From positions 186,001 to 250,000 of the IMG/VR virus record IMGVR_UViG_3300044701_002789: a stretch of DNA of 64,000 bases; one strand, given 5' to 3'. A program made the position numbers and the translations under genes. Below, in pieces: positions 2,391 through 26,814 of the stretch (position 1 is its first letter; the number at the start of each line of letters is the position of its first letter). The notes beneath the pieces are model-generated. The model worked only from the letters and a program-made list of their open reading frames with translations. It was not told the DNA's origin and ran no database searches.

Positions 2391-2641
2391 TTAGGAAAGA
2401 AACGAATAGTGTAACCCTTCAAAGGTGCAGAACAAACGACACCTCTCACTGGAGTTCCATTAGGACTTGTTGCAGTGAAGTTGAGACGATACATATCGTC
2501 TTGACTACAAGCAAAAGGATTAAATCCAGTAATTTCTACATTGGTGTATCCTTGTTCCTCAAGAATTGTGGTTGATGTTGCATTTCCATTGCAAGATGCA
2601 AGAAGAAAACAAAGAGCAATAATAGCAATTAGTTGTTTCAT
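2387..2641 (-). CDS. small lipoprotein
   Basis: MKQ + hydrophobic stretch + lipobox LASC; two further Cys. Confidence 0.75.
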   Translation of the reverse strand: MKQLIAIIALCFLLASCNGNATSTTILEEQGYTNVEITGFNPFACSQDDMYRLNFTATSPNGTPVRGVVCSAPLKGYTIRFFPK

Positions 2642-2895
2642 TGGGAATAATAATCAAGAAGTGAAAGAAGTTGTTCTGTGCCTTTATCAGTGGTAATAAG
2701 ATTTGCAGGAACCTTACCATCCAGATGTTTATTTGGTGTTTGCATCCAGTGGTGCATTAAAACTTCGTCGTGTCCCATTAGATTAGAAAGTTGAGACCAA
2801 ATGAGAAGAAACTTTAAGTCATCATACCACTGAATGAGACCTAATATTTCACCTGCCTTTCCTGCAGATTTTTGTAGAAGGTGTTTGTCGGTCAT
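2638..2895 (-). CDS. Xre/MbcA/ParS-type antitoxin C-terminal (toxin-binding) domain protein
   Basis: LMGHDEVLMHHWMQTPNKHLDGKVPANLITTDKGTEQLLSLL matches the W-x3-PN-x2-L-x-G-x2-P-x2-L-x2-T-x2-G family pattern. Confidence 0.7.
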   Translation of the reverse strand: MTDKHLLQKSAGKAGEILGLIQWYDDLKFLLIWSQLSNLMGHDEVLMHHWMQTPNKHLDGKVPANLITTDKGTEQLLSLLDYYSQ

Positions 2896-3119
2896 TTCCT
2901 ATCCCCCCATAGTTGTTCAAAATACCTACCATTTCTACCACAATACATCTCATATTCTCTAGCATCTTTACACAACTTACCTTTTTTGTCTCCAGTCACC
3001 ATATCACCAGTTATGATTGGGTTGTAACATTTATCAAGTGAGTTGCTCCCAAAAAGATGTCCTAACCAACTTTTCTCATAATAGAGACAATCTTTACATA
3101 GTTTGCGTTGTTCAGTCAT
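2892..3119 (-). CDS. Cys-rich hypothetical protein
   Basis: CKDC..C..C..C; start moved to 3119 because the -10 box lies at 3141-3146. Confidence 0.6.
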   Translation of the reverse strand: MTEQRKLCKDCLYYEKSWLGHLFGSNSLDKCYNPIITGDMVTGDKKGKLCKDAREYEMYCGRNGRYFEQLWGDRK

Positions 3120-3140
3120 AAGTTTTCTTTGATTACTCAT

Positions 3141-3197
3141 ATCATAACACAAAATCCACCACCCCACAAGAGGTAGTGTGACGGTTTCTCAAGTGTC
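3141..3197 (-). promoter_or_regulatory. early promoter module (palindrome + 33 nt + -10 TATGAT)
   Basis: + strand GACGGTT-TCTC-AAGTGTC at 3180-3197; TGtTATGAT on minus. Confidence 0.75.
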
Positions 3198-3647
3198 CTG
3201 TAGTTTAATGTATTTAAAATCTTGGTCATTAGTGCTCCAATGAATTTCTTTAATTGTAGGACAATTGGTAATGATGTAGTTGTAGCAAATTCTACAACAG
3301 AAACTATTTCTCAAATCATTACCACCGTGACCTCCCACCCTACAAATCACAAGTTTATTCCCAGGTTTTTGTGCTTTCAGGATACAATTGATTTCACAAT
3401 GAAGATATGTCTTGAGACGCAAACTCTTGTCCTTATACTTATTTGCCGCCATTACTGCAGCATAAAACTGTTGAGTATGCGTGTTCTCATAAGAATTAAT
3501 GCCCGAAGAAATCAATTTATTTCTTTTATCCAACAAAATTGCACCCATCTTTTTAGGTGCATTAGATGCTTTTGCAACTGCAATGACTTGATTGAGAATA
3601 GAATTCTTCAAATACGAAGGTTGTGCAATCAACGAGGCATCAATCAT
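3189..3647 (-). CDS. Zn-dependent cytidine/dCMP deaminase-fold protein
   Basis: KMGAILLD, LHCEINCI (HxE), FCCRIC (PCxxC variant). Confidence 0.8.
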   Translation of the reverse strand: MIDASLIAQPSYLKNSILNQVIAVAKASNAPKKMGAILLDKRNKLISSGINSYENTHTQQFYAAVMAANKYKDKSLRLKTYLHCEINCILKAQKPGNKLVICRVGGHGGNDLRNSFCCRICYNYIITNCPTIKEIHWSTNDQDFKYIKLQDT

Positions 3648-3671: not shown

Positions 3672-3728
3672 ATTGTATCACAGGTTCCTTGGATACCTCA
3701 AGGTCATTGTGACGGTTTGGAGAGTGTC
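3672..3728 (-). promoter_or_regulatory. early promoter module (-10 TACAAT)
   Basis: GACGGTT-TGGA-GAGTGTC at 3711-3728; 33-nt spacer with CCTTG/CAAGG hairpin. Confidence 0.75.
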
Positions 3729-3964
3729 CGGTAGTAATAAAACATTGCTTTAATTCTTAAAAGTATATTCTCATCACTTGCGGGGTTTTCCCTGATATGT
3801 TGAATGAAAGTTCTTGCGGTTACACTCTTTAGATTTTTAAATGAATAATCTAAAATAATATTCAGTTCTTCTGTTGTAGAAAACATAGAATAACTTTTTT
3901 GATATACATAAGACAACTCACTAAAAGATGGATTTGGATTATTAAAGATTTCGTGTAAGTTCAT
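3704..3964 (-). CDS. LRV/HEAT-like paralog 1
   Basis: NNPNPSFSEL, STTEELNII, ENPASDENILLRIKAM. Confidence 0.7.
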   Translation of the reverse strand: MNLHEIFNNPNPSFSELSYVYQKSYSMFSTTEELNIILDYSFKNLKSVTARTFIQHIRENPASDENILLRIKAMFYYYRTLSKPSQ

Positions 3965-4199
3965 TCACTTTAGTAAGTGCTTTGATTTTTAAAAGTAACT
4001 CCTCATCACTTGCGGGATTTCTTTTGAGGTTTTCTAACAATCCTTCTGTACTAATTAAACCTACTCTTTCATTGGAACCGCAAAAATTTAAAATAAGGTT
4101 TAATTCCTCTAGTGAAGACCCATAACGACTTCTATCTCCAATGAATATTGCTTCTTTAATTGATATGTATTCTTTAAGTAAGATTTCTTTTAAATCCAT
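3942..4199 (-). CDS. LRV/HEAT-like paralog 2
   Basis: SSLEELNLIL, RNPASDEELLLKIKAL. Confidence 0.7.
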   Translation of the reverse strand: MDLKEILLKEYISIKEAIFIGDRSRYGSSLEELNLILNFCGSNERVGLISTEGLLENLKRNPASDEELLLKIKALTKVNELTRNL

Positions 4200-4444
4200 C
4201 CTTCAATATCTCCTCTAATAAGTGATTTAATTTTCAAAAATAATTCTTCATCACATGCAGGATTTTCTTTTATGTTTTGGACAAGTAATGCTCCAAAGTA
4301 ACTCCATAATTTATCCGTAAAACAATAATCCACAAGAATATTAAGTTCTTCCAACGAAGACATTACGGAACTACTTTTGTCTAAAATATAAAGAAGTTCA
4401 TTTTCACTTGGATAAGGAATAGATATAATTTCTTGTAAATTCAT
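4190..4444 (-). CDS. LRV/HEAT-like paralog 3
   Basis: SSLEELNILV, ENPACDEELFLKIKSL. Confidence 0.7.
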   Translation of the reverse strand: MNLQEIISIPYPSENELLYILDKSSSVMSSLEELNILVDYCFTDKLWSYFGALLVQNIKENPACDEELFLKIKSLIRGDIEGWI

Positions 4445-4856
4445 ATGCTTTAATCAATAAGGCAAGGTCTTCGGTGCAGTTAGGATGTTGGAGAATTCTA
4501 TTCTTAATAAGTAGTCTATCAACATTCCAATACACATCACTAATTTTAAATATAATATTTTCCAAGACTTTTACATTAGTGTTTCTATTGTTTGCAATCA
4601 AATAATACAAATGTGGGTCTGTATTAAGTTCATAAATTTCCTCTATGATTTTAGAAGATGCATTAGGATGCCTTGCAATAGAACTACGAATGTAAGATAA
4701 GTGATTTAATCTACTGAAGATTACTTCCAATTCTTTCGTTGATGAATTGGGATTGTGCGTAATGTCTAATGGACTTTTTAAGGAATAAGTAAAACCATAA
4801 TCATAATACCACAAGAACCAATAACACTGTTTAAGAAACTTGAGTATCTTATTCAT
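4404..4856 (-). CDS. LRV/HEAT-like paralog 4 (multi-repeat)
   Basis: HNPNSS, IARHPNAS, IANNRNTN, ILQHPNCTEDLALLIKAYEF; start at MNKILK with GGAG RBS. Confidence 0.75.
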   Translation of the reverse strand: MNKILKFLKQCYWFLWYYDYGFTYSLKSPLDITHNPNSSTKELEVIFSRLNHLSYIRSSIARHPNASSKIIEEIYELNTDPHLYYLIANNRNTNVKVLENIIFKISDVYWNVDRLLIKNRILQHPNCTEDLALLIKAYEFTRNYIYSLSK

Positions 4857-5002
4857 AAGGTCTCCACAAAATCCATTGCTTTTGTTCTTAAATAAACAGT
4901 TTCTTCTAAATCCGGATAACAATAAGAGAAATGTATTGCACGATTTCTATCATAGAAATTTTTAGAATATGCAAGTTTCAAAATCAATTCTTTAATAGTC
5001 AT
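4853..5002 (-). CDS. LRV/HEAT-like paralog 5 (49 aa, not in ORF track)
   Basis: Hand translation MTIKELILKLAYSKNFYDRNRAIHFSYCYPDLEETVYLRTKAMDFVETL. Confidence 0.7.
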   Translation of the reverse strand: MTIKELILKLAYSKNFYDRNRAIHFSYCYPDLEETVYLRTKAMDFVETL

Positions 5003-5210
5003 CTTCTATTACTAATTGAGACCTATATGAATAACTATCTACCCACCTCTTTGCCTTTACTGTTAATATGATTTCTTCTGTTGAATGTGGGTGGTTTTCT
5101 GCAATTTTCCTATTCAAATAAGAACTGGAGGTAGCAAGTTGCATCAACCATTTTCTTGTGCGTTCAAGTTTAACATAAGGAATTAAACTCTTAAACAAAT
5201 AGTAGGTCAT
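4992..5210 (-). CDS. LRV/HEAT-like paralog 6
   Basis: LATSSSYLNRKIAENHPHSTEEIILTVKAKRW. Confidence 0.7.
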   Translation of the reverse strand: MTYYLFKSLIPYVKLERTRKWLMQLATSSSYLNRKIAENHPHSTEEIILTVKAKRWVDSYSYRSQLVIEDDY

Positions 5211-5368
5211 AAACTCTCCAAGAAGTTCATTGCTTTTGCTAGTAAAATGATTTCTTCTGTTGATGCATAATGATGTAGTGCATAATGTCTAAAATATGAG
5301 TTTTTAGATAAAGCACAATTTATTAAATCACTTTTTAACTTTATCCAATACAAGATTTCATTTTCCAT
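5207..5368 (-). CDS. LRV/HEAT-like paralog 7 (53 aa, not in ORF track)
   Basis: Hand translation MENEILYWIKLKSDLINCALSKNSYFRHYALHHYASTEEIILLAKAMNFLESL. Confidence 0.7.
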   Translation of the reverse strand: MENEILYWIKLKSDLINCALSKNSYFRHYALHHYASTEEIILLAKAMNFLESL

Positions 5369-5520
5369 TATCTCACCAGACCTTCAATAAAATCCATTGC
5401 TTTTGCAGTGAGAACGATTTCTTCTGTTGATTTATAATGATGCTGTGCATAATACCTATAAAAATAGTGCTCACTTACAGCAAAACGAAGTAATAATATT
5501 AATTCTTCTGTATCTTCCAT
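5368..5520 (-). CDS. LRV/HEAT-like paralog 8 (50 aa, not in ORF track)
   Basis: Hand translation MEDTEELILLLRFAVSEHYFYRYYAQHHYKSTEEIVLTAKAMDFIEGLVR. Confidence 0.7.
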   Translation of the reverse strand: MEDTEELILLLRFAVSEHYFYRYYAQHHYKSTEEIVLTAKAMDFIEGLVR

Positions 5521-6380
5521 CACCCAACAACAGAAGAAATCAGTTCCTCTACCTCTTTGCGTTCTTCAACTGGAATTGAAGAGTTACCAATTCCCACGCA
5601 CTGTTTCACCTGAACCTGACCTTTCTTGAGTGCATTGTAGTCCAACTCAAAGGTATAGGTTGGTTTGTTCTCCTTCTCAATCAGGAAGATTGCACTGCGT
5701 TCTCCAAGGATTTTATCCTCATAAGATGCAACACAATTCCGCACTCTCTTACCCCAGAGTGTGAGTTCCAGAGTATCGTTAGGTTCATAGATTTTATAAG
5801 AGTTCTTCTCAATCGGTAGAGGAATGAACTCTTTCTTATGTTCCTTATTGGTTGTGGTAGAGACAATATAAAGATGAGACATATGGTCGTGGAACTCTTC
5901 CAACCTCCAACGACGAGGACGAGTGATGGTTTCTTTACGAGAAACCAGTTGAACCATCTGTTTGAAAGTATCTGCAATTATATTGTCTGTCTTCTGGAGA
6001 CCTTCCTTATCATAATAAGTTTGAACCATATGCAGGAAAGTCGTAGAGGTCATCTGGTCTTTCATCCAGTCCCTTACTTCTGGTTTTACACAGTTGTAGA
6101 GTTCATAAATTTCCAGGATTTTTTCGTAGGTCTGGAAATAATCTACTGGAACATCATTCCACACTTGATTTACAAATGCAATGTTATTGATATAATTGAC
6201 TGAAGTATAGAACGGCACAAGTTCATTGATTTTCTTGGAACCAAAATACTTCTTGAATGAAGGAGTGTTGAAAAAGTCCTGAATTTTATCAGTAATAGGT
6301 TCTTTTACATAAGTAAGAATTGCATCCAGATTGGTGTTAAAATCAACAGAAAGTTCAACAGGGGATTTAGGTGCGGTCAT
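5520..6380 (-). CDS. PcfJ-like domain protein
   Basis: C-terminal LTLWGKRVRNCVASY...AIFLIE...TFEL...KQCVGIGN pattern. Confidence 0.7.
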   Translation of the reverse strand: MTAPKSPVELSVDFNTNLDAILTYVKEPITDKIQDFFNTPSFKKYFGSKKINELVPFYTSVNYINNIAFVNQVWNDVPVDYFQTYEKILEIYELYNCVKPEVRDWMKDQMTSTTFLHMVQTYYDKEGLQKTDNIIADTFKQMVQLVSRKETITRPRRWRLEEFHDHMSHLYIVSTTTNKEHKKEFIPLPIEKNSYKIYEPNDTLELTLWGKRVRNCVASYEDKILGERSAIFLIEKENKPTYTFELDYNALKKGQVQVKQCVGIGNSSIPVEERKEVEELISSVVG

Positions 6381-6402
6381 AATAGTTGAATTACTTGGTA
6401 GT

Positions 6403-6459
6403 AGTTTAACAGAAAATCAGTGAGAAAGGGAAGGGTCTTGTGACGGTTTGGAAAGTGTC
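6403..6459 (-). promoter_or_regulatory. early promoter module (-10 TAAACT)
   Basis: GACGGTT-TGGA-AAGTGTC at 6442-6459; 33-nt spacer. Confidence 0.75.
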
Positions 6460-6471
6460 TTATCGTCTAAA

Positions 6472-6858
6472 TCAACTGGGTTCTTCAAATGGATTCTTTA
6501 AGTAATCAAATGATGATTTTTTAGATAATTGCAAGCAATTCAAAAAATAAAAAGTATTTGGTAATAAGTTAGTAACACCATAATCATTTCTTGAAATAAA
6601 GGTCTCTGCTTTACGCAAGAGATGCAAATAATCTTTCTGTTCTTCTGTTGCGACAGTTTTTGCAATAATAAAATTAATTAGATTAGAATAACTGCAATCA
6701 TAATAATAAAAATTAAACTCATCTTCATCTCTGTAAGAATTTTTTGGTGAGTAATTAAATTTACCCAAATTATCAATGACCCACTGTATGTCTTTTGGGT
6801 CTTGGGTTTTATGCACTAATTTGAAGATGTTTTCAATTTTATGATTGGGATACAACAT
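6472..6858 (-). CDS. hypothetical protein, remote member of the KA-helix family
   Basis: TEEQKDYLHLLRKAETF. Confidence 0.6.
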   Translation of the reverse strand: MLYPNHKIENIFKLVHKTQDPKDIQWVIDNLGKFNYSPKNSYRDEDEFNFYYYDCSYSNLINFIIAKTVATEEQKDYLHLLRKAETFISRNDYGVTNLLPNTFYFLNCLQLSKKSSFDYLKNPFEEPS

Positions 6859-7141
6859 TGCAAAAATGATAAGATTTAAGAATTAGATGCATTTTGTCTT
6901 TAGTTTTGACTGATAGTTTCTCATATTGGTGGAGAGGTATAGAGTAAATAATACCCCTAATTAAATCCTTTTGAATGTATTGAAATATAAGATATGAAAA
7001 ACTAATGGAATAAAAGTCATTCTCATCTTCTTCAAATTCATCAATATGCTCCATAATTTCTTCTACTGCTTCTTTTAGACGAAATGTAGGGCATTGATTA
7101 AGAAGTTGAAACACCTCTTTGATTGTGGTGGGTTCAGTCAT
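6839..7141 (-). CDS. hypothetical protein, remote member of the KA-helix family
   Basis: TIKEV N-terminus like 7134-7526; MHLILKSYHF C-terminus. Confidence 0.55.
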   Translation of the reverse strand: MTEPTTIKEVFQLLNQCPTFRLKEAVEEIMEHIDEFEEDENDFYSISFSYLIFQYIQKDLIRGIIYSIPLHQYEKLSVKTKDKMHLILKSYHFCNVVSQS

Positions 7142-7526
7142 TGCGAGTGTCTCCTATCCAGGAGTTAAATGATTTGGTTGTTCTATTCATCCATTTCATT
7201 GCTTTAATTGTCACCAAATCATCTTCCTTTGTATTTGGGTTTTTCCACACTTTAGACCTTACCATTGAAGTGTTGTCTGTGGATAACCGTTGAAGAATTC
7301 CTGAAGGACAATTAGGATTTTCTGCAACTACAGCACGAACAAAACAATCATTATCAAATGAGATTAAATTTAATGTCGTTTGAGACACATTTAGATGTTC
7401 TGCAATGTTTGCAAGAACAATCCAATCCTTAAATGCCCAATAGATTAGGTGAAGGTCTTCTGCAGATGTAGTTGGGTCTTCAGTGAGTTCCTTAAGTTCT
7501 TTAATTGTAAGTTCTTCAGGGTTCAT
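7134..7526 (-). CDS. leucine-rich-repeat-variant (LRV/HEAT-like) protein
   Basis: LANIAEHLN, VRAVVAENPNCP, VRSKVWKNPNTKEDDLVTIKAMKW. Confidence 0.8.
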   Translation of the reverse strand: MNPEELTIKELKELTEDPTTSAEDLHLIYWAFKDWIVLANIAEHLNVSQTTLNLISFDNDCFVRAVVAENPNCPSGILQRLSTDNTSMVRSKVWKNPNTKEDDLVTIKAMKWMNRTTKSFNSWIGDTRND

Positions 7527-7547: not shown

Positions 7548-7603
7548 ATTCTACCACAGAAACTTCATCAGTTGGGAAACTCAAAGTCAGTTGCGAAAGT
7601 GTC
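7548..7603 (-). promoter_or_regulatory. early promoter module (-10 TGgTAGAAT)
   Basis: GTCAGTT-GCGA-AAGTGTC at 7586-7603, inside the 3' end of the upstream ORF; 32-nt spacer. Confidence 0.7.
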
Positions 7604-7831
7604 CTTTACCCAGTTGTGATTGAGGATTTCAATACAGAAACAGATTTTCCAACAAGAAATCATAATGTCTATGATACTATTAAGACCAAGATAAAGAATT
7701 AAAGAAGGTCCTGTTGGGTAATCATTCCAACTGAAAGAGAGTTGAAGTAATGACCTTTCTTTGAACTGAATAATTGCGAGGCAGTATTCAGTGCCGAAAT
7801 CCTCACGAATAAAAAAATCCAAGATTTTCAT
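7568..7831 (-). CDS. hypothetical protein
   Basis: 87-aa ORF, coupled. Confidence 0.65.
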   Translation of the reverse strand: MKILDFFIREDFGTEYCLAIIQFKERSLLQLSFSWNDYPTGPSLILYLGLNSIIDIMISCWKICFCIEILNHNWVKDTFATDFEFPN

Positions 7832-8025
7832 GAAGTTAGTTCCTCTGCTAATTGGAGTAAGTCATTTTGGTCTAAGACAATAATACCGTTCTGAGCATTA
7901 TAAAATTTAACTTTAGAAGGAAGCAACTTAAGAATTTCAGCAACTAATTGTTCTTCTGTTTCTGCTCCATTGTTTCTTGCTTCCCATATGGAGTTCATAA
8001 AATCTTTTGTTCTTTCAGTCATCAT
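7828..8025 (-). CDS. hypothetical protein
   Basis: 65-aa ORF, coupled. Confidence 0.65.
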   Translation of the reverse strand: MMTERTKDFMNSIWEARNNGAETEEQLVAEILKLLPSKVKFYNAQNGIIVLDQNDLLQLAEELTS

Positions 8026-8462
8026 TCACTCACATATTTTTTAAATGTAATCCCGTCCAAATGATCAATTTCGTGTAATATGCATCTAGCAATTATTCCG
8101 GTATGAGTTTCAAGAATGGGATGACCAGACAAATTTCTATACTTCACCGTAACTTGCTTTGCCCTCGGAATCTCATAAAACTGCCCAGCAAATGAAAGAC
8201 AACCTTCTTCTTCTGTTACTTTTTCTTCACTCTCAAAGATAATTTCTGGATTAATCATTACCTTTGGGGTTTCATTTACTAAAACAATAATAATTCGTCT
8301 CAGGATTCCAACCTGATTTCCTGCTAATCCTACACCATTATTCTGTAGCATTACTTCAATCATACTTGCAGCAATGTTACGAACTGTATCATCTATTTTG
8401 GCAATACGTTTCGATTTTTGGCGAAGAGGTTTTTCACCATCCTGCAGTATAGTTAATGTCAT
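8022..8462 (-). CDS. def: peptide deformylase (C-terminally short phage type)
   Basis: GVGLAGNQVG, EGCLSF and HEIDHLDG motifs. Confidence 0.95.
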   Translation of the reverse strand: MTLTILQDGEKPLRQKSKRIAKIDDTVRNIAASMIEVMLQNNGVGLAGNQVGILRRIIIVLVNETPKVMINPEIIFESEEKVTEEEGCLSFAGQFYEIPRAKQVTVKYRNLSGHPILETHTGIIARCILHEIDHLDGITFKKYVSE

Positions 8463-9209: not shown

Positions 9210-9395
9210 TCATTTTTCGCTTTGTTTAAAAAGTTCAATTTTACTATAATCTTTCTGGTAGACAAGTATGCACACATTTCTGCGCTTTTCTTCCGAAAAT
9301 AATCTAACACAAATGGTAACATAATTACTACCAACAAATGTAATAGGTCCGATATAGTTTTCATATCGGACCATTACTCCTTCAGCAAACATCAT
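9210..9395 (-). CDS. hypothetical protein
   Basis: 61-aa ORF. Confidence 0.6.
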   Translation of the reverse strand: MMFAEGVMVRYENYIGPITFVGSNYVTICVRLFSEEKRRNVCILVYQKDYSKIELFKQSEK

Positions 9396-10080
9396 GGAAC
9401 TTCTTGAGAACTTTATTATTTACATCATAAAGCCCAAGAGCACCTCCATTAGAACCACACTCCGGATCAAGGACGATAGAATTTTCACTGATAGCAGTGA
9501 CATGGTAGTGACCAGAAACCATAACATAATCATGATTTCGGTTGTTATTCCACCACTCAACTCTACCCTTGGTTTCCCTATCAATCGGACCGTAGAGCAT
9601 AATAGACTTTGCTGCCTTACTTAGATCATCCTCATAAAGAAGACAATGATCTTCGTACTCCGGAACATTAACGCGACTTGAAAAATAAGCGTGAGAAACA
9701 CGGTATTCTTTTTGATTCTTATCCCGGAACACAACACCATACGGCATGGCGCACAGAAAATCATAAACTTCTTGAAGACTAATTCCGGCATTTTGGAAGT
9801 CATCAAGAGTCTTTTGAAGATCTTCACCAACGAAGACCTTATTTCCTTTGATGTACCGAATCAGTTTGTTTTGATGATTGGATTGGATGCAGATTGCAGA
9901 ATTGTTTTCAACCTGCTCTCGCACCTGAAGGTAAACTGATGCAGAATCCGAATGGTCTACCCGAGAGTCAAACAAATCCCCAAGAAATATCGGAGTCAAA
10001 TTATGATTGATGCAGTATTCAATTGCTTGTTGTAGCAAATGTGCTTGAGAATGCACATCACTGATAAAGGCGAAATTCAT
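9382..10080 (-). CDS. calcineurin-like metallophosphoesterase (PrpA/Pnkp phosphatase-like)
   Basis: SDVH, LGDLFD, SNHQ, VSHA, SGHYH, DPECGSNG motifs. Confidence 0.85.
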   Translation of the reverse strand: MNFAFISDVHSQAHLLQQAIEYCINHNLTPIFLGDLFDSRVDHSDSASVYLQVREQVENNSAICIQSNHQNKLIRYIKGNKVFVGEDLQKTLDDFQNAGISLQEVYDFLCAMPYGVVFRDKNQKEYRVSHAYFSSRVNVPEYEDHCLLYEDDLSKAAKSIMLYGPIDRETKGRVEWWNNNRNHDYVMVSGHYHVTAISENSIVLDPECGSNGGALGLYDVNNKVLKKFHDVC

Positions 10081-10104
10081 GGAGAGGTTCCGTGTCATGC
10101 ATTA

Positions 10105-10160
10105 ATTATACCAGTATGGAGGGGTTCTGGGAACTCCCGATGGTCGGTTTCTAAAGTGTC
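10105..10160 (-). promoter_or_regulatory. early promoter module (-10 TGgTATAAT)
   Basis: GTCGGTT-TCTA-AAGTGTC at 10143-10160; 32-nt spacer with GGGGTTC/GAACTCC hairpin. Confidence 0.8.
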
Positions 10161-10171
10161 CCTATATCAAT

Positions 10172-10645
10172 TCAGTTACCACGCTCAATGGTCTCAAAGT
10201 CTTCCGAGTTGTTCGGAACCTCAAATGAATGATACATTGAGGTCAGAACACTTTCGGGAATAACTTTACCTGGACGATGCTTGTTACGTTCGAGTGCTTC
10301 TTTGAGAGGAATCACGAAGTAAACAGCACGTTTACGATACATATCGGCAGGTACTTTGGAAGTTTTATTCTTCCGGGACTTCCGAGTTAGATTAGTCTGA
10401 TCAATGATGATGTCTTTTCCATCACGAATCGCCAACTTCAGTTGCAAATCCATATGACTCGTTGCCTTTGAGATAGTGCTCTTAAAGACATCATCATAGG
10501 TTTTATTCTGTTCTTCCGCAACCCTTTGGATATAATTGTCAGTGGAGATTACCACTGCATTTTCCCAATAGGGCATTGCAAGTAGAGTTTTAACATAGGT
10601 GGATTTTCCAGAAGTAGGAATACCACACAGCATAATCAATTCCAT
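10172..10645 (-). CDS. P-loop polynucleotide kinase (AAA_33-type, kinase domain only)
   Basis: MLCGIPTSGKST Walker A, IIIDQTNLTR, ALERNKHR lid. Confidence 0.85.
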   Translation of the reverse strand: MELIMLCGIPTSGKSTYVKTLLAMPYWENAVVISTDNYIQRVAEEQNKTYDDVFKSTISKATSHMDLQLKLAIRDGKDIIIDQTNLTRKSRKNKTSKVPADMYRKRAVYFVIPLKEALERNKHRPGKVIPESVLTSMYHSFEVPNNSEDFETIERGN

Positions 10646-11847
10646 TTGAGATTCCCCCACATCCAACGGTTTTCGTTTACTTTGGTTTGAGTATTGATAG
10701 AAGTTTTAATCTTTTCCACCAGCAAATTTTTGATGGGAACTCCATTACGAAGAGAGAACATAAAACTTTGGTGAGTTTTGGGAATATGGGAGTTTACAAG
10801 GATTGCAAACTCTTTTTGGCTCTGACCCCTTTCAAACTGCTTGTACAGATCATAAATGTCAGTTCCAACATCCTCCAAAGATGCCCAGAACGCAGTCTGG
10901 AACTTCTTGAGACGATCTACATCTTCTTCCGTAAGAAGAGGAATAAGATCATCTACATCATCATTAACAATGGTAGCAATTACATTTTTTTCCTGATTAA
11001 TCGCTTCCTTGGACTTATGGCGAAGAACATATTGATTCGCCTTAATTTTTACCATGTGACCATTTTCAAAGCGCAGAACGATTCCTTCAGAATCCTCCCA
11101 TTCGCGGATCTGATCCACAAACAAATGGATATTCTGAATTGCCAAACCATCTACTGCCTTAACAACAGGAATGTTCCAAGCAGTCGCATAACTAACCATA
11201 GTCTTATAGTTGACATAAGACCCATTGTAATTATAACGAATAGCCGTAAGAATCAGTTGATCTTCAGGATAATCCAGAACAATTCGGTTTTTGCGAGAGC
11301 ACCATTCAAAAATAGGAGTGGTTCCTTTTTGAATACACTTCATAATAAAAGTATGGTATGGTTTATGTCGTTCATTAGTAGGAATCCACTTATCAGAAAT
11401 AAACTTTTCTGCCTGCTCTGAAATTTCGGTTACACCCGCTTTCGTGCCAAGAAGAAAACCATCACCATAAGGAATCGGACGAATCATAGACCCATCCAAT
11501 TTCTCAAGAACCACATGAGGTTCATAGAGATTAATCTTATTAGTTTGAGTTTCCAGTTTTTCACCTACGTTGAAAAACTTGTGATACGGACGAGAAATGA
11601 GTTTTCCATTAGCATCAAAAATCAGACCACGGCACTCGCGTCGGATAGCATACTGTAGAGTACGCTCAGCACGCATTTTCGCAGAACCACCAGAACACTT
11701 TACCTCAGGAAAAGTATCCTCCAGATTTACTGCATAATTAATTACAGTGTACCAACCTTTATTAATAACAAGAAATTCTTCTCTATCTTTGATGTGAGGA
11801 AGAACATCATCAATGGTTTCAATTTGTGGGAAAGAGTAATTAAACAT
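10636..11847 (-). CDS. rnlA: T4 Rnl1-family RNA ligase
   Basis: HKFFNVGE, EKLDGSMI (motif I KxDG), EGIV, MVKIK. Confidence 0.9.
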   Translation of the reverse strand: MFNYSFPQIETIDDVLPHIKDREEFLVINKGWYTVINYAVNLEDTFPEVKCSGGSAKMRAERTLQYAIRRECRGLIFDANGKLISRPYHKFFNVGEKLETQTNKINLYEPHVVLEKLDGSMIRPIPYGDGFLLGTKAGVTEISEQAEKFISDKWIPTNERHKPYHTFIMKCIQKGTTPIFEWCSRKNRIVLDYPEDQLILTAIRYNYNGSYVNYKTMVSYATAWNIPVVKAVDGLAIQNIHLFVDQIREWEDSEGIVLRFENGHMVKIKANQYVLRHKSKEAINQEKNVIATIVNDDVDDLIPLLTEEDVDRLKKFQTAFWASLEDVGTDIYDLYKQFERGQSQKEFAILVNSHIPKTHQSFMFSLRNGVPIKNLLVEKIKTSINTQTKVNENRWMWGNLKWN

Positions 11848-11868
11848 AATCAAATCTCGTACATAACT

Positions 11869-11925
11869 ATCATACAACAAAAAAAGGGGGCGTGGATGCC
11901 CCCTTGTGCCAGTTCAGGGATTGGG
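11869..11925 (-). promoter_or_regulatory. early promoter module (-10 TATGAT) for the RNA ligase operon
   Basis: GCCAGTT-CAGG-GATTGGG at 11908-11925; 33-nt spacer that contains the terminator. Confidence 0.65.
11879..11903 (-). terminator. intrinsic terminator
   Basis: GGGGC-ATCCAC-GCCCC followed by T8 on minus, just after the 11914 stop. Confidence 0.8.
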
Positions 11926-14282: not shown

Positions 14283-14468
14283 CTAACTTTGGATTAGTTC
14301 TTGGTATTTTTCTTCGGGTAGCAAACAGAGTACACAAGAAGCAATCTCATAAATGTCTTCTTCTTCAAGACCATCTAGTGTCATTAGAGGTCCATCACCG
14401 AAAGAAATTGAAAATGAATATCCATCGGTGGGATTATACCCACCGCATGTTTGAATTCTACTTGCCAT
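14283..14468 (-). CDS. hypothetical protein
   Basis: 61-aa ORF. Confidence 0.55.
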   Translation of the reverse strand: MASRIQTCGGYNPTDGYSFSISFGDGPLMTLDGLEEEDIYEIASCVLCLLPEEKYQELIQS

Positions 14469-15057
14469 TTACTTTTTTAAGTATAAAGGTGCCATCATTA
14501 TTATCAATCCAATCCACAGTATCACCCTCTTTTAGGTTTGCTTCTTTCAGCAATTCATCAGGAAACTGGATGAAATACTCACCATTTGTGCTGTCAACTT
14601 CTACTGGAATGACCCAACTTTTTTTATCAGTATTAATCATATCGGTAAGATCATTTCCTGCCGGATCAATCAAATCATTATTTTCTACCCAAAAATTGTA
14701 GTGATCAGGTTCAAATTGATTATCAGGAAAATTAGTGATTCTATCTAGAGTCAAATAGTCATTTGCCAGGTATTCTAGATCACTATGTCCCCAAGGAGGC
14801 ATAAAGTCATCCTTGTTTTGATTTCCTAATTCAACTACAGTTTTATTCCAAGCATCTTTAAATTTTTCATCAAATTCATCCAAATAATATTTAAGAAATT
14901 CATCAGCAGCATACATCAATTTTTCTGCCTTTTCTCTGTTTCCAGATCCTAGGGCATCAATTGCAGAATCTAGAATATCCCGAGCGGTACTCACTTTACA
15001 GACAGTGAGTTCCAGTTCGTTCATTACTTCCCAAACTTTTTCATAATTAAGAGTCAT
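14458..15057 (-). CDS. coiled-coil + AbrB/MazE-like domain protein
   Basis: C-terminal IQFPDELLKEANLKEGDTVDWIDNNDGTFILKK. Confidence 0.7.
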   Translation of the reverse strand: MTLNYEKVWEVMNELELTVCKVSTARDILDSAIDALGSGNREKAEKLMYAADEFLKYYLDEFDEKFKDAWNKTVVELGNQNKDDFMPPWGHSDLEYLANDYLTLDRITNFPDNQFEPDHYNFWVENNDLIDPAGNDLTDMINTDKKSWVIPVEVDSTNGEYFIQFPDELLKEANLKEGDTVDWIDNNDGTFILKKVNGK

Positions 15058-15244
15058 GCTTTTCTCCATAAAGAATGTCAATACGATTGTCTACTGCTTC
15101 AATAGAAGACTGAAGAGTTTTGATAGATTGGGAAATTTCTTCCAATCTTGTTTGCATCATAAAAAATTCGATCCGATTTTCAATATAAGTAGGATCTTTT
15201 ATTTCCCGCGAAGAAGAAAATAAATTTTTAAAAAACTTCATCAT
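15047..15244 (-). CDS. hypothetical coiled-coil protein
   Basis: 65-aa ORF. Confidence 0.55.
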   Translation of the reverse strand: MMKFFKNLFSSSREIKDPTYIENRIEFFMMQTRLEEISQSIKTLQSSIEAVDNRIDILYGEKHDS

Positions 15245-21812: not shown

Positions 21813-21868
21813 ATTGTACAGCAAAAAAAGCCTCTACAAGAACCAGAGTGGACAGTCTTTAAAGTGTC
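21813..21868 (-). promoter_or_regulatory. early promoter module (-10 TACAAT)
   Basis: GACAGTC-TTTA-AAGTGTC at 21851-21868; 32-nt spacer with T7 run. Confidence 0.8.
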
Positions 21869-21929
21869 CTGATTCTTATAGAAGCTTATAACTTGTCTTG
21901 AAGCGGCACAAACCTATCCTAGGTATGTT

Positions 21930-23934: not shown

Positions 23935-24549
23935 TTAATACCACTCTGTAAATTTAATTCTATTTTCCGAAAATACTTTTTTGTAATTTTCTATTTTATT
24001 TCTATAAACAACTAAATCATCAAAAAAATGTGGATGAAATTCAATGTAAATTTCATTAATGTATTTAATTGTGCCAGATGATATTAATTTATCTATAATA
24101 TCAAATTCGCTTCCTTCAACATCTAATTTTACAACAATAAAATCATTAATACTAGAAAATGTTTCTATAATATTTGAAAAATCTAATACCCTTACTATCT
24201 CTGTTTCTGAATTATATTTAATTGGATTCTCTTGTAATTTTTGTGGGGGATTTAATAATATATTAGAAGACTGCCCAGTAAATGTACCAACTTCAGTTCC
24301 ATCCCAAATAGTAGATTCGGATAGGTTTAAATTTACATAATCATTTTTATTAGATACACCAGCATTAAAATGAATAATATTCAATCCATCATCTAATAAT
24401 TTTAAATAATTTTCTTTTGAACTAATATATGTTTTTGGATTTGGTTCAAAACAATAACATTCCCAACTAGAATCTATACCATAGATTTTAGATATTTCGT
24501 TGAACCCCTGAAACAAGTGTGTTCCGCAGTCAAAGAATTTTTTTTTTTT
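23935..24549 (-). CDS. FkbM-family methyltransferase domain, 5' end frameshifted at the A12 tract
   Basis: KFFDCGTHLFQG (motif I) upstream of the called TTG; YCFEPN, VKLDVEGSE; no in-frame ATG. Confidence 0.7.
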   Translation of the reverse strand, partial: KKKKFFDCGTHLFQGFNEISKIYGIDSSWECYCFEPNPKTYISSKENYLKLLDDGLNIIHFNAGVSNKNDYVNLNLSESTIWDGTEVGTFTGQSSNILLNPPQKLQENPIKYNSETEIVRVLDFSNIIETFSSINDFIVVKLDVEGSEFDIIDKLISSGTIKYINEIYIEFHPHFFDDLVVYRNKIENYKKVFSENRIKFTEWY

Positions 24550-25844
24550 AAATTTTTATTAGTACTCTGAATTTCATTATTAATATAAACCATAAATTCA
24601 CAATTATAAGTGTCAATAAAAGTATCATCAAATATTTTATCAGTTATGTCTAGTGATTTTCCCCAAGAAATATTTTGTCTGGTGCAAGACATTACCTTGT
24701 AATCGTTGAACTTAGTTAAATATGTATCTCTGAATTTTTTGAATTTTTCTCTGAAATTATAACCTTTGAGGTGAATTTCTATTGATATAAATTTAACATT
24801 ATTGAATATAAAATCTATATTTTCTTCGGTAAAAATATTATATTCACCACCTTCACAGTCAACTTTCATATAATCAATATGATTAATTGAATATGTTGAT
24901 ATAAGTTCTTTAAAAGTAATGGGAATAAAACTCTTATCATTCCCAAAAACATTAATTTCATCAGTATTATTACTTACTATTCCATTATTAATATAAGTTA
25001 TTGATGTATTAAAGTTATTGAATAATTTTTCGGAACAGTTTTTAACCAATGTTTTTAGTAAATTTTTAGATGGTTCAACACAATATACTTTTTTTGGTTT
25101 TTGATCTAAAATTGATATAGTATATGCACCAACACTTGCACCAATATCCAAAACAATATCATTTTCTTTTACATCTTTCCAAAATCTATAAACATTTTCA
25201 TGTATCACTTCTCTTTCTATTGTAACAATGTCTTCTTCCGTTAGGTCTGCCCAATCAAAGTTGTTTGGATAATTAAATGTTTGACCGATTGAATTTTTTC
25301 CTAATCTAATTAAGTTTTGATTTATACTATTTTTGTGTAATTCATCAAAATTATCCCAGTAATTTTTTGTAAGAAGATCAAATAGATTTCTACTTTCATC
25401 ACCTTTACCCCACCACCAAGCTGCAACTGCTTTTTGGAATAACAATAAATGTTTTCCACTATACTCAGGAATGTTAATACTTTCTATTTCATTATTATGA
25501 CATTGTAGACCAAGATTTGCATAGGTATAACAACTTTGCCATTCTTGGTTCTTTTCATACAATAGAGATAAGAAATAATATGCCTCTGGTCTTTGTGGCA
25601 ATAAGTTTAAGGCATTTTCTAATGTTACTTTTTCAGTATTATCTCTTGAACCTTGTAATTTATAACAAAACGCTGATTTTAGTAAACATTCATAAGCAAG
25701 TAAATCATTTTTAGATCTTTCCGCAGTTCTTAGATAATAAGTGTGTGCGGGTGCATACTGACCTTGTTTTTCATACCATTTCGCGAGATTATAATTATTT
25801 TCTGGATTTTCGGTATCTAGTGAAAATTTAATAAGCTCATTCAT
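24474..25844 (-). CDS. TPR + FkbM-family methyltransferase
   Basis: Helical repeats (NYNLAKWYE, PEAYYFLS); VLDIGASVG, YCVEPS, MKVDCEGGE. Confidence 0.8.
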   Translation of the reverse strand: MNELIKFSLDTENPENNYNLAKWYEKQGQYAPAHTYYLRTAERSKNDLLAYECLLKSAFCYKLQGSRDNTEKVTLENALNLLPQRPEAYYFLSLLYEKNQEWQSCYTYANLGLQCHNNEIESINIPEYSGKHLLLFQKAVAAWWWGKGDESRNLFDLLTKNYWDNFDELHKNSINQNLIRLGKNSIGQTFNYPNNFDWADLTEEDIVTIEREVIHENVYRFWKDVKENDIVLDIGASVGAYTISILDQKPKKVYCVEPSKNLLKTLVKNCSEKLFNNFNTSITYINNGIVSNNTDEINVFGNDKSFIPITFKELISTYSINHIDYMKVDCEGGEYNIFTEENIDFIFNNVKFISIEIHLKGYNFREKFKKFRDTYLTKFNDYKVMSCTRQNISWGKSLDITDKIFDDTFIDTYNCEFMVYINNEIQSTNKNLKKKNSLTAEHTCFRGSTKYLKSMV

Positions 25845-26814
25845 TAATAAAGTCCTCAACTACTGATTTTGAAATTCTGAGTATATACGCTGCGTTGTCT
25901 TGCGTTCCAAATGTAATTAGAAAATCATCATTATATTCGGCCATGCCACAAGAAAATTCAATTTTAAAATTTAAAAATGAAAATAACTTTGATACTTTTT
26001 GAAGTTTAAAATTCTTATCCCATATAACAAACCGATGACGATAAGTTGCATCTTTTCTACCTTGTTCTGAATTATAAAGTTCTGTTTCATGGAGAAGAGA
26101 AAGATATCCATTTTGATATGGAATAACTTGTGAACCACCTCTTAAATCATTTTTTAATTCTGTAGTGTAAGGACTTGTTTCAATTATTGTGGAATCTTTT
26201 CCTGTAATATCAAATTTCAATAATGCAGTTGGATTAGTCCATTTTAAAAGATGAAAAGGTTTATCTTCAATTGGAGTACAATTTTTCATACAATATTCAT
26301 CATCTGGTGGAGGACCTGGAATTCTATATCTAGAAACTTCTTTAACTTCAGAACCATTGAACCTCAATTCAGAAAGTTCCATTCTTCCAGTTCCAATAGT
26401 GTCTACATCTCTGCGTACACCTATAGCGTAAATCTTACCGTTCCATTGAATCAAACGAACATCTTCCAACCCAACAAATTCCCATTGTGGTTGATAAGTA
26501 TCAAAATTTGATGTATCTATTTTTGAGTAATGGAGTATATTTAAATCTTCATCTAATTCTGCAATATGATTTGCAGTTCTGAGGTGCATATCATTCTCTG
26601 GGTGTATGTAGGATAATGGTCCCCACATATGTTCAAATTTATTTAATTCCGAATGATATAATGTGTAATTTACATTTCTGATATTGACTAATATTCTTCC
26701 ATCAACTACTAAAACTGATGGATTTGTGAGAGAAGGTCCACAGAGATCTTCGGGATTTATGAGAAGTGGTTTAATAATGCCACCATTATCTAATGCAAGT
26801 TTTACAAAATTCAT
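25837..26814 (-). CDS. five-bladed propeller glycosidase/phosphorylase-like protein (GH130/GH43-like)
   Basis: TNPSV, GLEDVRL, KNCTP, LRGGSQ, YRHRFV, IEFSCG. Confidence 0.65.
   Translation of the reverse strand: MNFVKLALDNGGIIKPLLINPEDLCGPSLTNPSVLVVDGRILVNIRNVNYTLYHSELNKFEHMWGPLSYIHPENDMHLRTANHIAELDEDLNILHYSKIDTSNFDTYQPQWEFVGLEDVRLIQWNGKIYAIGVRRDVDTIGTGRMELSELRFNGSEVKEVSRYRIPGPPPDDEYCMKNCTPIEDKPFHLLKWTNPTALLKFDITGKDSTIIETSPYTTELKNDLRGGSQVIPYQNGYLSLLHETELYNSEQGRKDATYRHRFVIWDKNFKLQKVSKLFSFLNFKIEFSCGMAEYNDDFLITFGTQDNAAYILRISKSVVEDFINE

What the first reader, a model, noticed from the sequence alone, without database searches (positions are those of the whole stretch)
3704..7526. Tandem expansion of about 11 LRV/HEAT-like mini-proteins sharing a C-terminal 'EE-x-L-x-x-KA' helix
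Seen: eight contiguous, translationally coupled ORFs (3704-5520; three of 49-53 aa are missing from the ORF track) plus three more at 6472-7526. Their C-terminal motifs align: ENILLRIKAM, EELLLKIKAL, EELFLKIKSL, EDLALLIKAY, EETVYLRTKAM, EEIILTVKAK, EEIILLAKAM, EEIVLTAKAM, KDYLHLLRKAE, KDKMHLILKSY, EDDLVTIKAM. Most have an (N/H)P-x-S/C turn typical of leucine-rich-repeat-variant units. Repeat number varies from about 1 to 4 and the N-termini are highly divergent. Both clusters follow early promoter modules. Inference: a diversifying adaptor family with a shared docking helix and variable recognition ends. They could co-assemble on one partner (possibly the PcfJ-like protein) or act as decoys/inhibitors of host defence or host HEAT-repeat partners. 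I know no described phage system with this layout; it is the best candidate for a new system in this window.
Basis: partly seen in the sequence, partly recalled or inferred. Interest (0 to 1): 0.78.

Follow-up and report, generated by a model that had tools for sequence, protein, structure and literature searches.

The report
Phage LRV mini-protein array beside PcfJ
An uncultured T4-like cyanophage carries nine small helical-repeat (LRV) genes, eight of them in one operon behind a PcfJ-like gene of unknown function, and because this pairing recurs in several distant phage lineages the two probably work together, though what they do is untested.

Summary
Eight overlapping minus-strand genes (3704-5520) plus the 130-aa gene at 7134-7526 form one protein family. 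The ORFs at 6472-6858 and 6839-7141 share the upstream operon but show no detectable homology, so the count is 9, not 11.

- **Family type.** The shared C-terminal motif is the last unit of a leucine-rich-repeat-variant (LRV) solenoid plus a family-specific cap. Profile cross-searches, hhalign, an exhaustive HMMER search and AlphaFold2 models all point to LRV.
- **Real genes.** The 49-53 aa ORFs are called and conserved in related metagenomic phages. dN/dS is 0.09-0.69.
- **Turnover.** Across relatives, copy number runs 4-7 for the short type and 3-4 for the 85-aa type. Subtypes are present patchily and chimeras occur.
- **Link to PcfJ.** LRV genes lie within 9 kb of 5 of 7 short-form PcfJ genes, of which three carry this cap, and of 0 of 35 long-form ones. 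One phage has 19-21 capped LRV genes around PcfJ, and one PcfJ-like protein has LRV-like repeats inserted.

Best reading: interchangeable protein-binding modules that work with PcfJ in a host-takeover region. Docking, targets and timing are untested. No positive selection was detected. I found no published description.

The parts
7588..7604 (-). Promoter-like module (17-nt motif, then 34 nt, then an extended -10 TAGAAT) upstream of the 7134 gene
   Evidence: One of 6 coding-strand copies in the window; shuffles give a mean of 1.1
7134..7526 (-). m11: 130-aa protein with four LRV repeats ending in the family cap
   Evidence: Pfam LRV 22.5 bits (cutoff 21.6). Orthologues at 81-89% identity. Cap HMM 36.5 bits
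6839..7141 (-). m10: 100-aa acidic protein in the same unit as m11; not a detectable family member
   Evidence: HMM E 0.9-3.9. hhalign below 1%. Conserved in L002, L004 and L013. dN/dS 0.30-0.69
6472..6858 (-). m09: 128-aa protein with a conserved N-terminus and divergent C-terminus; not a detectable family member
   Evidence: No HMM hit. hhalign 0.2%. Orthologue alignment. dN/dS 0.22-0.39
6444..6460 (-). Promoter-like module upstream of PcfJ, heading the nine-gene unit
   Evidence: About 75 nt upstream of PcfJ is conserved in five relatives, including L011 where the upstream gene differs
5520..6380 (-). Short-form PcfJ-like protein (286 aa), the conserved anchor gene
   Evidence: Pfam PcfJ 47 bits (cutoff 25). 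dN/dS 0.07-0.17. Short and long forms compared
5368..5520 (-). m08: short-type (B) LRV mini-protein, 50 aa; its start overlaps the PcfJ stop (TGATG)
5207..5368 (-). m07: B-type mini-protein, 53 aa
   Evidence: AlphaFold2 model with three helices, pLDDT 97. Atlas match to a viral LRV cluster, TM 0.76, rmsd 1.1 A
4992..5210 (-). m06: B-type mini-protein, 72 aa
   Evidence: Orthologues in L002 and L016
4853..5002 (-). m05: B-type mini-protein, 49 aa
   Evidence: Orthologues in L016 and L017 at 86% identity, dN/dS 0.31
4404..4856 (-). m04: 150-aa protein with about four LRV-like repeats and the cap
   Evidence: HMM links to m11 (E 1e-5 to 1e-6) and to the B type (5.6e-6). Orthologue alignment
4190..4444 (-). 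m03: 85-aa-type (A) protein, 84 aa
   Evidence: AlphaFold2 model with five helices, pLDDT 89.7. Atlas matches to LRV clusters. VIA-align matches to HEAT/ARM solenoids at Z about 7
3942..4199 (-). m02: A-type protein, 85 aa
3704..3964 (-). m01: A-type protein, 86 aa, last gene of the unit
3713..3729 (-). Next promoter-like module, inside the 3' end of m01; it heads the dCMP-deaminase unit and marks the end of the array

Best explanation
The locus is a lineage-specific expansion of small leucine-rich-repeat-variant (LRV) solenoid proteins in an uncultured T4-like cyanomyovirus of about 258 kb.

**Members.** There are nine: two four-repeat proteins (130 and 150 aa), three of about 85 aa (five helices) and four of 49-72 aa (three helices, about 1.5 repeats). 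All end in the same capped terminal repeat. That repeat reads roughly R..A..(N/H)P.(A/S/C)(T/D)EE-hh-L..KA-h-.F.

**Transcription.** Eight members are co-transcribed and translationally coupled behind a short-form PcfJ-like gene. The ninth heads the neighbouring unit.

**Proposed function (inferred).** The minis are interchangeable protein-binding modules. Their variable N-terminal helices or repeats contact different host or phage proteins. Their constant C-terminal helix engages a common partner, most probably the PcfJ-like protein. This would happen in the host-takeover and counter-defence part of the infection programme.

**Shown:** family membership, LRV fold (predicted), purifying selection, copy-number turnover and the PcfJ linkage.

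**Inferred:** binding, docking on PcfJ and the role in takeover.
For: **Family and fold**
- Cross-group HMM hits rank first among 925 six-frame pieces. The cap HMM scores members at 36-66 bits against at most 8.4 for background.
- hhalign gives 93% between the short type and the Pfam-LRV-positive m11.
- An exhaustive HMMER search of 1.84 billion representatives with the short-type profile found, beyond the family itself, mostly Pfam LRV/HEAT repeat proteins. One is a 139-aa canonical LRV protein with the same cap.
- AlphaFold2 models have pLDDT 97 and 89.7. Their best ESM-Atlas shape matches are LRV clusters, mostly viral: TM 0.76 and rmsd 1.1 A over 44 residues.

**Real genes**
- dN/dS is 0.09-0.69, and gene calls are conserved in relatives.

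**Turnover**
- The short type has 4, 5, 5 and 7 copies. The 85-aa type has 3-4 copies.
- Subtypes form orthogroups that are patchily present.
- 87-aa genes in L015, L016 and L017 combine the N-terminal body of one 85-aa subtype with the C-terminal tail of another.

**PcfJ link**
- Short-form PcfJ genes (252-311 aa) have LRV-family genes within 9 kb in 5 of 7 IMG/VR lineages; three of those five carry this cap.
- All 35 long-form loci (552-623 aa, about 600 kb of DNA) have none.
- Contigs L025 (PcfJ 57% identical) and L012 (45%) add two more cases.
- L026/L033 (44%) holds 19-21 capped LRV genes around PcfJ.
- L073 has LRV-like repeats inserted in a 416-aa PcfJ-like protein.
- Atlas lists PcfJ+Sel1-repeat fusions. 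A DGR survey lists PcfJ-like domains upstream of hypervariable regions (PMC5758913).

**The cap is held at protein level**
- Between subgroups, third-codon-position identity is 0.37, which argues against gene conversion.
- Paralogues within a lineage share one cap, and different lineages have different caps.

**Context**
- Nearby are T4 Rnl1-type RNA ligase, a kinase, a phosphatase, peptide deformylase, dCMP deaminase and a lone Xre/MbcA/ParS antitoxin domain.
Against: - There is no physical evidence of any interaction, and no multimer prediction could be run.
- PcfJ has no known function.
- Part of the cap conservation is just the LRV signature (R, P, L and A positions), so a purely structural capping role is possible.
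- Two short-form PcfJ lineages (L034, L062) have no LRV gene within 9 kb.
- L031/L032 has only one LRV neighbour, and it has no detectable cap.
- The lineages are not phylogenetically independent, so the Fisher p of 2.7e-5 overstates the support. That test also counted L073 as a sixth positive among eight non-long-form lineages.
- Whole-gene dN/dS below 1 gives no sign of an arms race.
- PADLOC gave no hits.
- Expression timing is unknown and the host is not cultured.
Confidence: 0.5

Rival explanations
1. The minis are independent small LRV binders, for example host-takeover or anti-defence factors. They share only a structural capping repeat. PcfJ is merely a neighbour in a hypervariable accessory island.
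For: The R, P, L and A positions of the cap are the generic LRV signature. LRV proteins are common in phages without reference to PcfJ: an Atlas cluster of 235 members is 98% viral, and a Moorella phage has LRV proteins. L034 and L062 have short PcfJ without LRV neighbours.
Against: The genes are in the same operon with 1-4 nt start/stop overlaps. Synteny persists down to about 35% PcfJ identity. L073 has a PcfJ-LRV fusion. No LRV hits occur near any of the 35 long-form PcfJ genes. All paralogues in a lineage share a lineage-specific cap.
Confidence: 0.25
2. The minis are decoys or dominant-negative mimics of host LRV/HEAT sensor domains. The targets would be, for example, NACHT/STAND NTPases with LRV repeats, whose assembly or recognition the minis would block.
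For: The short-type profile hits NACHT+LRV/HEAT proteins in the exhaustive search (P0125 and P0127). The neighbourhood holds counter-defence-type genes. The repertoire is variable.
Against: Those hits reflect the repeat signature only, at E 6e-4 to 9e-4. Neither host nor target is known. PADLOC gave no hits. dN/dS is below 1. This reading does not explain the PcfJ link.
Confidence: 0.1
3. The array is the decaying remnant of one or more long LRV-repeat genes broken by stops, and the small ORFs are not functional proteins.
For: Each mini corresponds to 1.5-2.5 repeat units of longer LRV proteins found in relatives.
Against: Every unit has its own ATG with a coupled stop/start junction. Lengths and boundaries are conserved across at least six related phages. 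dN/dS is 0.09-0.69. The AlphaFold2 monomer models are confident.
Confidence: 0.03
4. The ORFs at 6472-6858 and 6839-7141 are highly divergent members of the same family.
For: Both have a K-[AS] helix in register with the cap (direct reading). They sit between an LRV gene and PcfJ in four phages.
Against: HMM E is at least 0.87 or there is no hit. hhalign probabilities are 0.06-0.7%. The m09 match needs a 4-residue gap, and its orthologues lose the motif.
Confidence: 0.15

Closest known systems
Leucine-rich repeat variant (LRV) proteins, Pfam PF01816 / PF25591, in the ARM/HEAT-like helical-repeat group (the grouping is from my own knowledge, not tested here)
   Same: The repeat signature is the same: R..A..NP.tP.e.L..La. 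m11 passes the Pfam cutoff. The predicted fold of the minis superposes on LRV clusters. Related phages carry canonical multi-repeat versions.
   Different: Most members are cut down to 1.5-2.5 repeats (46-87 aa). All carry a family-specific C-terminal cap. They are organised as tandem, translationally coupled arrays tied to PcfJ. None has a known function.
Lineage-specific expansions and multigene families in large viruses. Examples are the roughly 35-copy zinc-ribbon family of Bacillus phage G (PMC7824862) and, from my own knowledge, poxvirus ankyrin and ASFV MGF families.
   Same: These too are tandem paralogues of a small protein-binding domain, with copy-number and repertoire differences between close relatives and chimeras produced by unequal crossover.
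   Different: This is a different fold in a phage setting. The arrays have a conserved non-paralogous anchor gene (PcfJ) and a cap shared by all paralogues.
PcfJ-like proteins (PF14284), including long-form phage versions (S-EIVl, B3/B23) and DGR targets with a PcfJ-like domain
   Same: The anchor gene is a clear member at 47 bits. In some DGR target proteins a PcfJ-like domain sits upstream of the diversified region (PMC5758913). That parallels a constant PcfJ paired with variable binders.
   Different: The gene here is a short form that lacks the roughly 300-aa N-terminal half. The variable part is encoded as separate germline paralogues. No DGR component was seen in the array, but I did not search the window for a reverse transcriptase.
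Anti-defence (anti-CRISPR-type) accessory loci anchored by a conserved marker gene (my own knowledge)
   Same: Both have small proteins, a variable repertoire between relatives, a conserved adjacent anchor and counter-defence-type neighbours.
   Different: The proteins here are homologous to one another rather than unrelated. No inhibitory activity or target is known, and there is no HTH-type regulator.

Membership tests
LRV repeat (Pfam PF01816 / PF25591) | Score at or above the Pfam gathering threshold | tested here: met
   m11 meets it: LRV 22.5 bits against a cutoff of 21.6 (LRV_2 23.4 against 27). The other eight members do not reach it individually (m04 LRV_2 E 0.26). Their membership rests on profile links to m11 and to canonical LRV proteins.
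LRV repeat (Pfam PF01816 / PF25591) | Repeat of about 24 residues with the signature R..A..NP.tP.e.L..La, aligned in register | tested here: met
   hhalign of the short type against the last repeat of m11 gives 93% probability, E 2.7e-7. The short-type profile hits multi-repeat Pfam-LRV proteins in 2-7 stretches. P0126 joins canonical repeats to the same cap. For the 85-aa type the link is weaker, at E about 6e-4.
LRV repeat (Pfam PF01816 / PF25591) | Right-handed superhelix of alternating alpha and 3-10 helices | tested here: inconclusive
   AlphaFold2 models are all-helical hairpins. They superpose on LRV clusters at TM 0.76 with rmsd 1.1 A, and TM 0.55-0.66 for the 85-aa type. Foldseek against PDB and AFDB gave nothing significant. 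The helix type (3-10 or alpha) could not be read from the output. These are predictions only.
HEAT/ARM repeats | Two- or three-helix repeats of 37-47 residues matching HEAT/ARM profiles | tested here: not met
   No HEAT or ARM Pfam hit for any window protein. VIA-align lists HEAT/ARM solenoids only at a flat Z of about 6-7, which the tool notes is within the range of common helical arrangements. The proteins are HEAT-like in architecture, not members.
PcfJ-like (PF14284) | Score above the Pfam gathering threshold over the domain | tested here: met
   47 bits against a cutoff of 25, covering residues 159-277. All top Atlas feature hits are PcfJ clusters.
Tandem multigene family with copy-number turnover ('genomic accordion' type) | Adjacent paralogues whose number and repertoire differ between close relatives, with recombinant copies | tested here: met
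   The short type has 4, 5, 5 and 7 copies and the 85-aa type 3-4. Orthogroups are patchily present. Chimeric 87-aa genes and a near-identical duplicate in L019 occur.
Tandem multigene family with copy-number turnover ('genomic accordion' type) | Amplification driven by selection from a host factor | not testable with these tools
   This needs infection experiments. Whole-gene dN/dS is below 1.
Anti-defence locus | Demonstrated inhibition of a defence system, or homology to a known inhibitor | tested here: inconclusive
   No hits in PADLOC, which holds defence rather than anti-defence models. PHROGs gave nothing for the minis. No anti-defence library was available, and activity is not testable here.

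The most novel reading that the evidence does not exclude
Short-form PcfJ is a constant effector or scaffold. It is retargeted by a genome-encoded library of swappable LRV adaptors that dock through their common C-terminal cap. This would be a 'germline' counterpart of DGR-diversified PcfJ fusion proteins. It would let a phage address many host proteins with one activity, with repertoire turnover (3 to 21 adaptors) tracking host variation.
Probability: 0.2. Interest if true: 0.8.

Novelty: new variant of a known kind. Interest (0 to 1): 0.58.

Why it matters
PcfJ-like proteins are widespread in phages, plasmids and some DGR targets, yet nothing is known of their function. This locus gives a concrete, testable partner hypothesis. 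The evidence is that short PcfJ genes tend to travel with capped LRV proteins, are sometimes fused to LRV repeats, and sit in the same operon. It also defines a compact family of 46-87-aa proteins with confident predicted folds. Those proteins are easy to express and screen for binding partners. Finally, it documents a repeat-protein expansion (up to about 10 kb and 19-21 genes in one relative) in T4-like cyanophage relatives, a group otherwise known for metabolic accessory genes.

Tried and rejected
- **Phage genome searches.** Near-DNA and protein searches of 50,697 deposited phage genomes found no close relative and no copy of the family. They returned only generic LRV proteins in a Moorella phage and long-form PcfJ in S-EIVl and B3/B23. 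The neighbourhoods of those PcfJ genes hold no family member, although B3 has seven unrelated 41-52-aa ORFs upstream of its PcfJ.
- **Domain libraries.** PHROGs and PADLOC gave nothing for the minis.
- **Solved structures.** PDB sequence-profile searches gave nothing.
- **Structure searches.** Foldseek against PDB and AFDB clusters gave no significant match. VIA-align gave only a flat list of solenoids.
- **Atlas feature search.** The search for m03 gave only sub-threshold leads.
- **Sigma-70 scan.** It found fewer sites than shuffles did (18 against 25.7). The promoter claim therefore rests on the phage-specific motif instead.
- **Literature.** Searches on PcfJ, and on LRV or HEAT in phages, found no description.
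- **Rejected: pseudogene fragments.** dN/dS and conserved gene boundaries argue against it.
- **Rejected: gene conversion as the cause of the shared cap across subgroups.** Third-position identity between subgroups is only 0.37.
- **Rejected: membership of m09 and m10.** Searches show no detectable homology.

Full report
**Anatomy.**
- All genes in the region are on the minus strand.
- From 7526 down to 3704 they run m11 (130 aa), m10 (100), m09 (128), a 91-nt gap, PcfJ-like (286 aa; Pfam PcfJ 47 bits), m08 (50), m07 (53), m06 (72), m05 (49), m04 (150 aa from the ATG at 4856), m03 (84), m02 (85) and m01 (86).
- From PcfJ to m01 there is no intergenic space. Starts overlap the preceding stop by 1-41 nt (TGATG, TAATG, ATGA and longer overlaps), and Shine-Dalgarno-like GGAG/GAAGG sequences lie in the preceding gene's tail.
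- A 17-nt motif followed after 34-35 nt by an extended -10 occurs six times in the 64-kb window, always on the coding strand and 60-80 nt before a start codon. Shuffles give 1.1.
- Copies precede m11, PcfJ and the dCMP-deaminase gene downstream of m01. This gives two transcription units: m11-m10-m09, and PcfJ plus eight minis.
- The roughly 75 nt before PcfJ is conserved in five relatives, even where the upstream gene differs.
- The generic sigma-70 scan was not enriched.

**Is the family real?**
- All-against-all BLASTP shows two tight groups. The A group (m01-m03) is 34-48% identical. The B group (m05-m08) shows BLASTP links of 24-56% identity. m04 and m11 bridge the two groups.
- HMMs built from each group, using orthologues from two related contigs, were searched against all 925 six-frame pieces of the window. 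The other groups came back as the top non-self hits, with E from 1e-6 to 0.09.
- An HMM of the shared 42-residue C-terminal unit separates nine members (36-66 bits) from everything else (at most 8.4 bits).
- hhalign gives B against m11 93% probability, E 2.7e-7 over 43 columns. A against m11 and A against B give E about 6e-4 over about 30 columns.
- m09 and m10 are never recovered, and hhalign probability is below 1%. I therefore count nine members, not eleven. m09 and m10 are conserved co-transcribed genes of unknown kind.

**What the motif is.**
- m11 passes the Pfam LRV threshold.
- The B consensus is about 1.5 LRV units. The invariant R, L and A are the LRV signature, while E-E, K and F are family-specific.
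- An exhaustive HMMER search of 1.84 billion representative proteins with the B profile returned only 22 hits at E of 1e-3 or better.
  - Thirteen are the family itself.
  - Of the other nine, six are Pfam LRV/HEAT repeat proteins matched in one to seven stretches. They include NACHT/STAND proteins and a 139-aa canonical LRV protein that ends in the same cap.
- AlphaFold2 gives confident all-helical models: B has three helices at pLDDT 97, and A has five helices at pLDDT 89.7.
- Foldseek against PDB and AFDB found nothing significant. VIA-align found only a flat list of HEAT/ARM solenoids at Z about 7.
- The ESM-Atlas shape search put LRV clusters first or near the top.
  - For B, the first match has TM 0.76 and rmsd 1.1 A over 44 residues, to a cluster that is 99% LRV and 98% viral.
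  - For A, LRV clusters rank 2, 3 and 8.
'HEAT-like' holds only as architecture.

**Are the small ORFs genes?**
- The window is part of a roughly 258-kb IMG/VR viral genome. A virion protein is about 45% identical to those of T4-like Synechococcus phages.
- m11 has orthologues at 81-89% identity.
- Syntenic contigs L002, L004, L011, L013/14 and L015-L019 carry the same architecture, with the small ORFs called independently.
- Word-indexed searches of 5.8 billion proteins found 61 (B) and 44 (A) clusters. All are unnamed and all come from short metagenome contigs.
- Pairwise dN/dS to orthologues is 0.09-0.69 for the minis. PcfJ gives 0.07-0.17 and the deaminase 0.10-0.14. This indicates purifying but relaxed selection, with no whole-gene sign of positive selection. 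Gene overlaps and short lengths make these estimates rough.

**Turnover.**
- B copy number is 4 in the window, 5 in L002, 5 in L011 and 7 in L013/14. A copy number is 3 or 4.
- Trees group paralogues by subtype across phages: about six A subtypes and at least nine B subtypes. The subtypes therefore predate the split of these phages and are patchily retained and reordered.
- L015, L016 and L017 carry an 87-aa gene that joins one A subtype's body to another's tail at the conserved motif. L019 has a near-identical B duplicate.
- In the cap codons, third-position identity is 0.67 within groups but 0.37 between groups. The cap is therefore kept at protein level across groups, not by recent gene conversion.
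- In several relatives the tail of one A gene and the N-terminus of the next are the same nucleotides read in two frames.

**Link to PcfJ.**
- The distant B-profile hits led to two further phage contigs.
  - L025 (PcfJ 57% identical) has PcfJ followed by minis of 73, 82, 63, 66, 132 and 95 aa with the cap. After a 76-aa ORF comes the same Xre/MbcA/ParS antitoxin-domain gene that lies about 800 nt downstream of the array in the window, after the dCMP-deaminase and a 91-aa ORF.
  - L023/L026 (PcfJ 44%) has PcfJ inside a roughly 10.8-kb block of 19-21 capped LRV genes of 61-166 aa, with a ClpS gene among them.
- A scan of IMG/VR with a PcfJ alignment gave 47 loci.
- LRV-family ORFs occur within 9 kb, always on the PcfJ strand, in the window's phage (9), L031/32 (1), L033 (21), L035 (5), L036 (4) and L073 (5). 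They are absent from the other 36 loci, about 650 kb of DNA.
- The split follows PcfJ length.
  - Short forms of 252-311 aa have LRV neighbours in 5 of 7 lineages.
  - Long forms of 552-623 aa have none in any of 35 loci.
- L073's 416-aa PcfJ-like protein has two LRV-like repeats inserted between its conserved halves (Pfam LRV 20.1 bits, just under the cutoff).
- Counting L073 with the seven short-form lineages gives 6 of 8 against 1 of 36, Fisher p 2.7e-5. That p value is not corrected for phylogeny.
- In L035/36 and L073 all LRV paralogues share a different, lineage-specific C-terminal cap.
- Atlas also lists bacterial PcfJ+Sel1-repeat fusions. A DGR survey lists PcfJ-like domains upstream of diversified regions (PMC5758913).

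**Interpretation.**
- *Shown:* a nine-member LRV family; real genes; an operon with PcfJ; rapid repertoire turnover; and a repeated evolutionary association, plus one fusion, with short-form PcfJ.
- *Inferred:* the minis are protein-binding modules with variable N-terminal surfaces and a constant C-terminal helix that engages a common partner, most plausibly PcfJ.
  - The cap helix is hydrophobic on nearly every face. This is my helical-wheel reading of the consensus. It fits an interface better than a solvent-exposed terminal helix.
  - Lineage-specific caps shared by all paralogues fit co-evolution with one partner.
- The neighbourhood suggests host takeover or counter-defence. It contains T4 Rnl1-type ligase, a kinase and a phosphatase at 9382-11880, peptide deformylase, dCMP deaminase and a lone antitoxin domain. 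Nothing tests this. PADLOC was blank.
- PcfJ's activity is unknown, so the mechanism stops at 'adaptor plus unknown core'.

**Novelty.** LRV repeats are a known fold, and viral LRV clusters already exist in sequence and structure collections. Lineage-specific expansions are known in jumbo phages (PMC7824862). I found no description of capped LRV mini-protein arrays or of a PcfJ-LRV module. None of the 50,697 deposited phage genomes contains the family. I rate it a new variant of a known kind, of moderate interest. It is worth a multimer prediction and a pull-down.

Noticed in passing
window 21853-21869, 10145-10161, 7588-7604, 6444-6460, 3713-3729, 3182-3198 (all minus strand): A phage-specific promoter-like module: a 17-nt motif (consensus near GGACACTTTCNAAACCG), then 34-35 nt, then TGnTAnAAT. 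Each copy lies 60-80 nt upstream of a gene start. There are six copies against 1.1 expected. The upstream element sits far from the -10, which suggests an activator or alternative-sigma site.
   Followed up: partly
window 2638-2895 (-); also L013 12524-12790, L016 2571-2837, L025 6541-6792: A stand-alone Xre/MbcA/ParS C-terminal antitoxin domain (Pfam 38.9 bits). It is conserved downstream of the LRV array even in the relative with 57%-identical PcfJ. It is a candidate neutraliser of host RES-type toxins.
   Followed up: partly
window 9382-11880 (-): A T4 Rnl1-type RNA ligase (414 aa), an AAA_33/KTI12-like kinase (164 aa) and a metallophosphatase (238 aa) in a row. This looks like a tRNA-repair module of the kind used against anticodon nucleases. 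A peptide deformylase lies at 8022-8462.
   Followed up: partly
L015 705-968, L016 1724-1987, L017 1835-2098: 87-aa chimeric A-type genes. The body comes from one subtype and the tail from another, joined at the conserved cap. This is direct evidence of unequal crossover within the array.
   Followed up: partly
L002 6431-6456 and 6666-6691, L011 6100-6125; in the window, the 41-nt m04/m03 overlap at 4404-4444: Dual coding at gene junctions. The tail of the upstream gene (…EFKRNL…) and the N-terminus of the next gene (MNLKEI…) are the same nucleotides read one frame apart. This may explain why both are conserved.
   Followed up: partly
L026 5745-6041 (L023 11267-11563): A ClpS-like N-degron adaptor gene sits inside the 19-21-gene LRV array of the distant relative. 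It hints at a link to regulated proteolysis.
   Followed up: no
L073 8290-9540: A 416-aa PcfJ-like protein with two LRV-like repeats inserted between its conserved N- and C-terminal parts, a natural fusion of the two components. Canonical LRV genes with their own cap lie nearby.
   Followed up: partly
window 54488-56131 (-): A 547-aa protein with an Mtd_N (major tropism determinant N-terminal) match at 25.9 bits, just under the cutoff of 26.3. I did not check whether a DGR is present.
   Followed up: no
window 37705-40083 and 41948-45943 (-): A 792-aa RCC1-repeat protein (540 bits). Also a 1331-aa collagen-repeat protein with a C-terminal endosialidase-chaperone (Peptidase_S74) domain, presumably a tail fibre.
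   Followed up: no
window 3003-3119: The only near-DNA match to any deposited phage: 117 nt at 90.6% to Synechococcus phage S-CREM1, annotated there as a high-potential iron protein and a hypothetical protein. It lies inside a Cys-rich 91-aa ORF (2892-3167).
   Followed up: no
window 14458-15081 (-): A 207-aa protein whose C-terminal 32 residues match the MazE antitoxin fold (24.1 bits, cutoff 24.7). This is another possible antitoxin mimic.
   Followed up: no
window 24001-26000: A G+C dip to 0.263, against about 0.34-0.37 around it, over the ORFs at 23935-25859.
   Followed up: no
L021 1934-3131 (Synechococcus phage B3 gp29-gp35): Seven consecutive 41-52-aa ORFs directly upstream of the long-form PcfJ gene of phage B3. 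They are not related to the LRV minis by HMM.
   Followed up: partly
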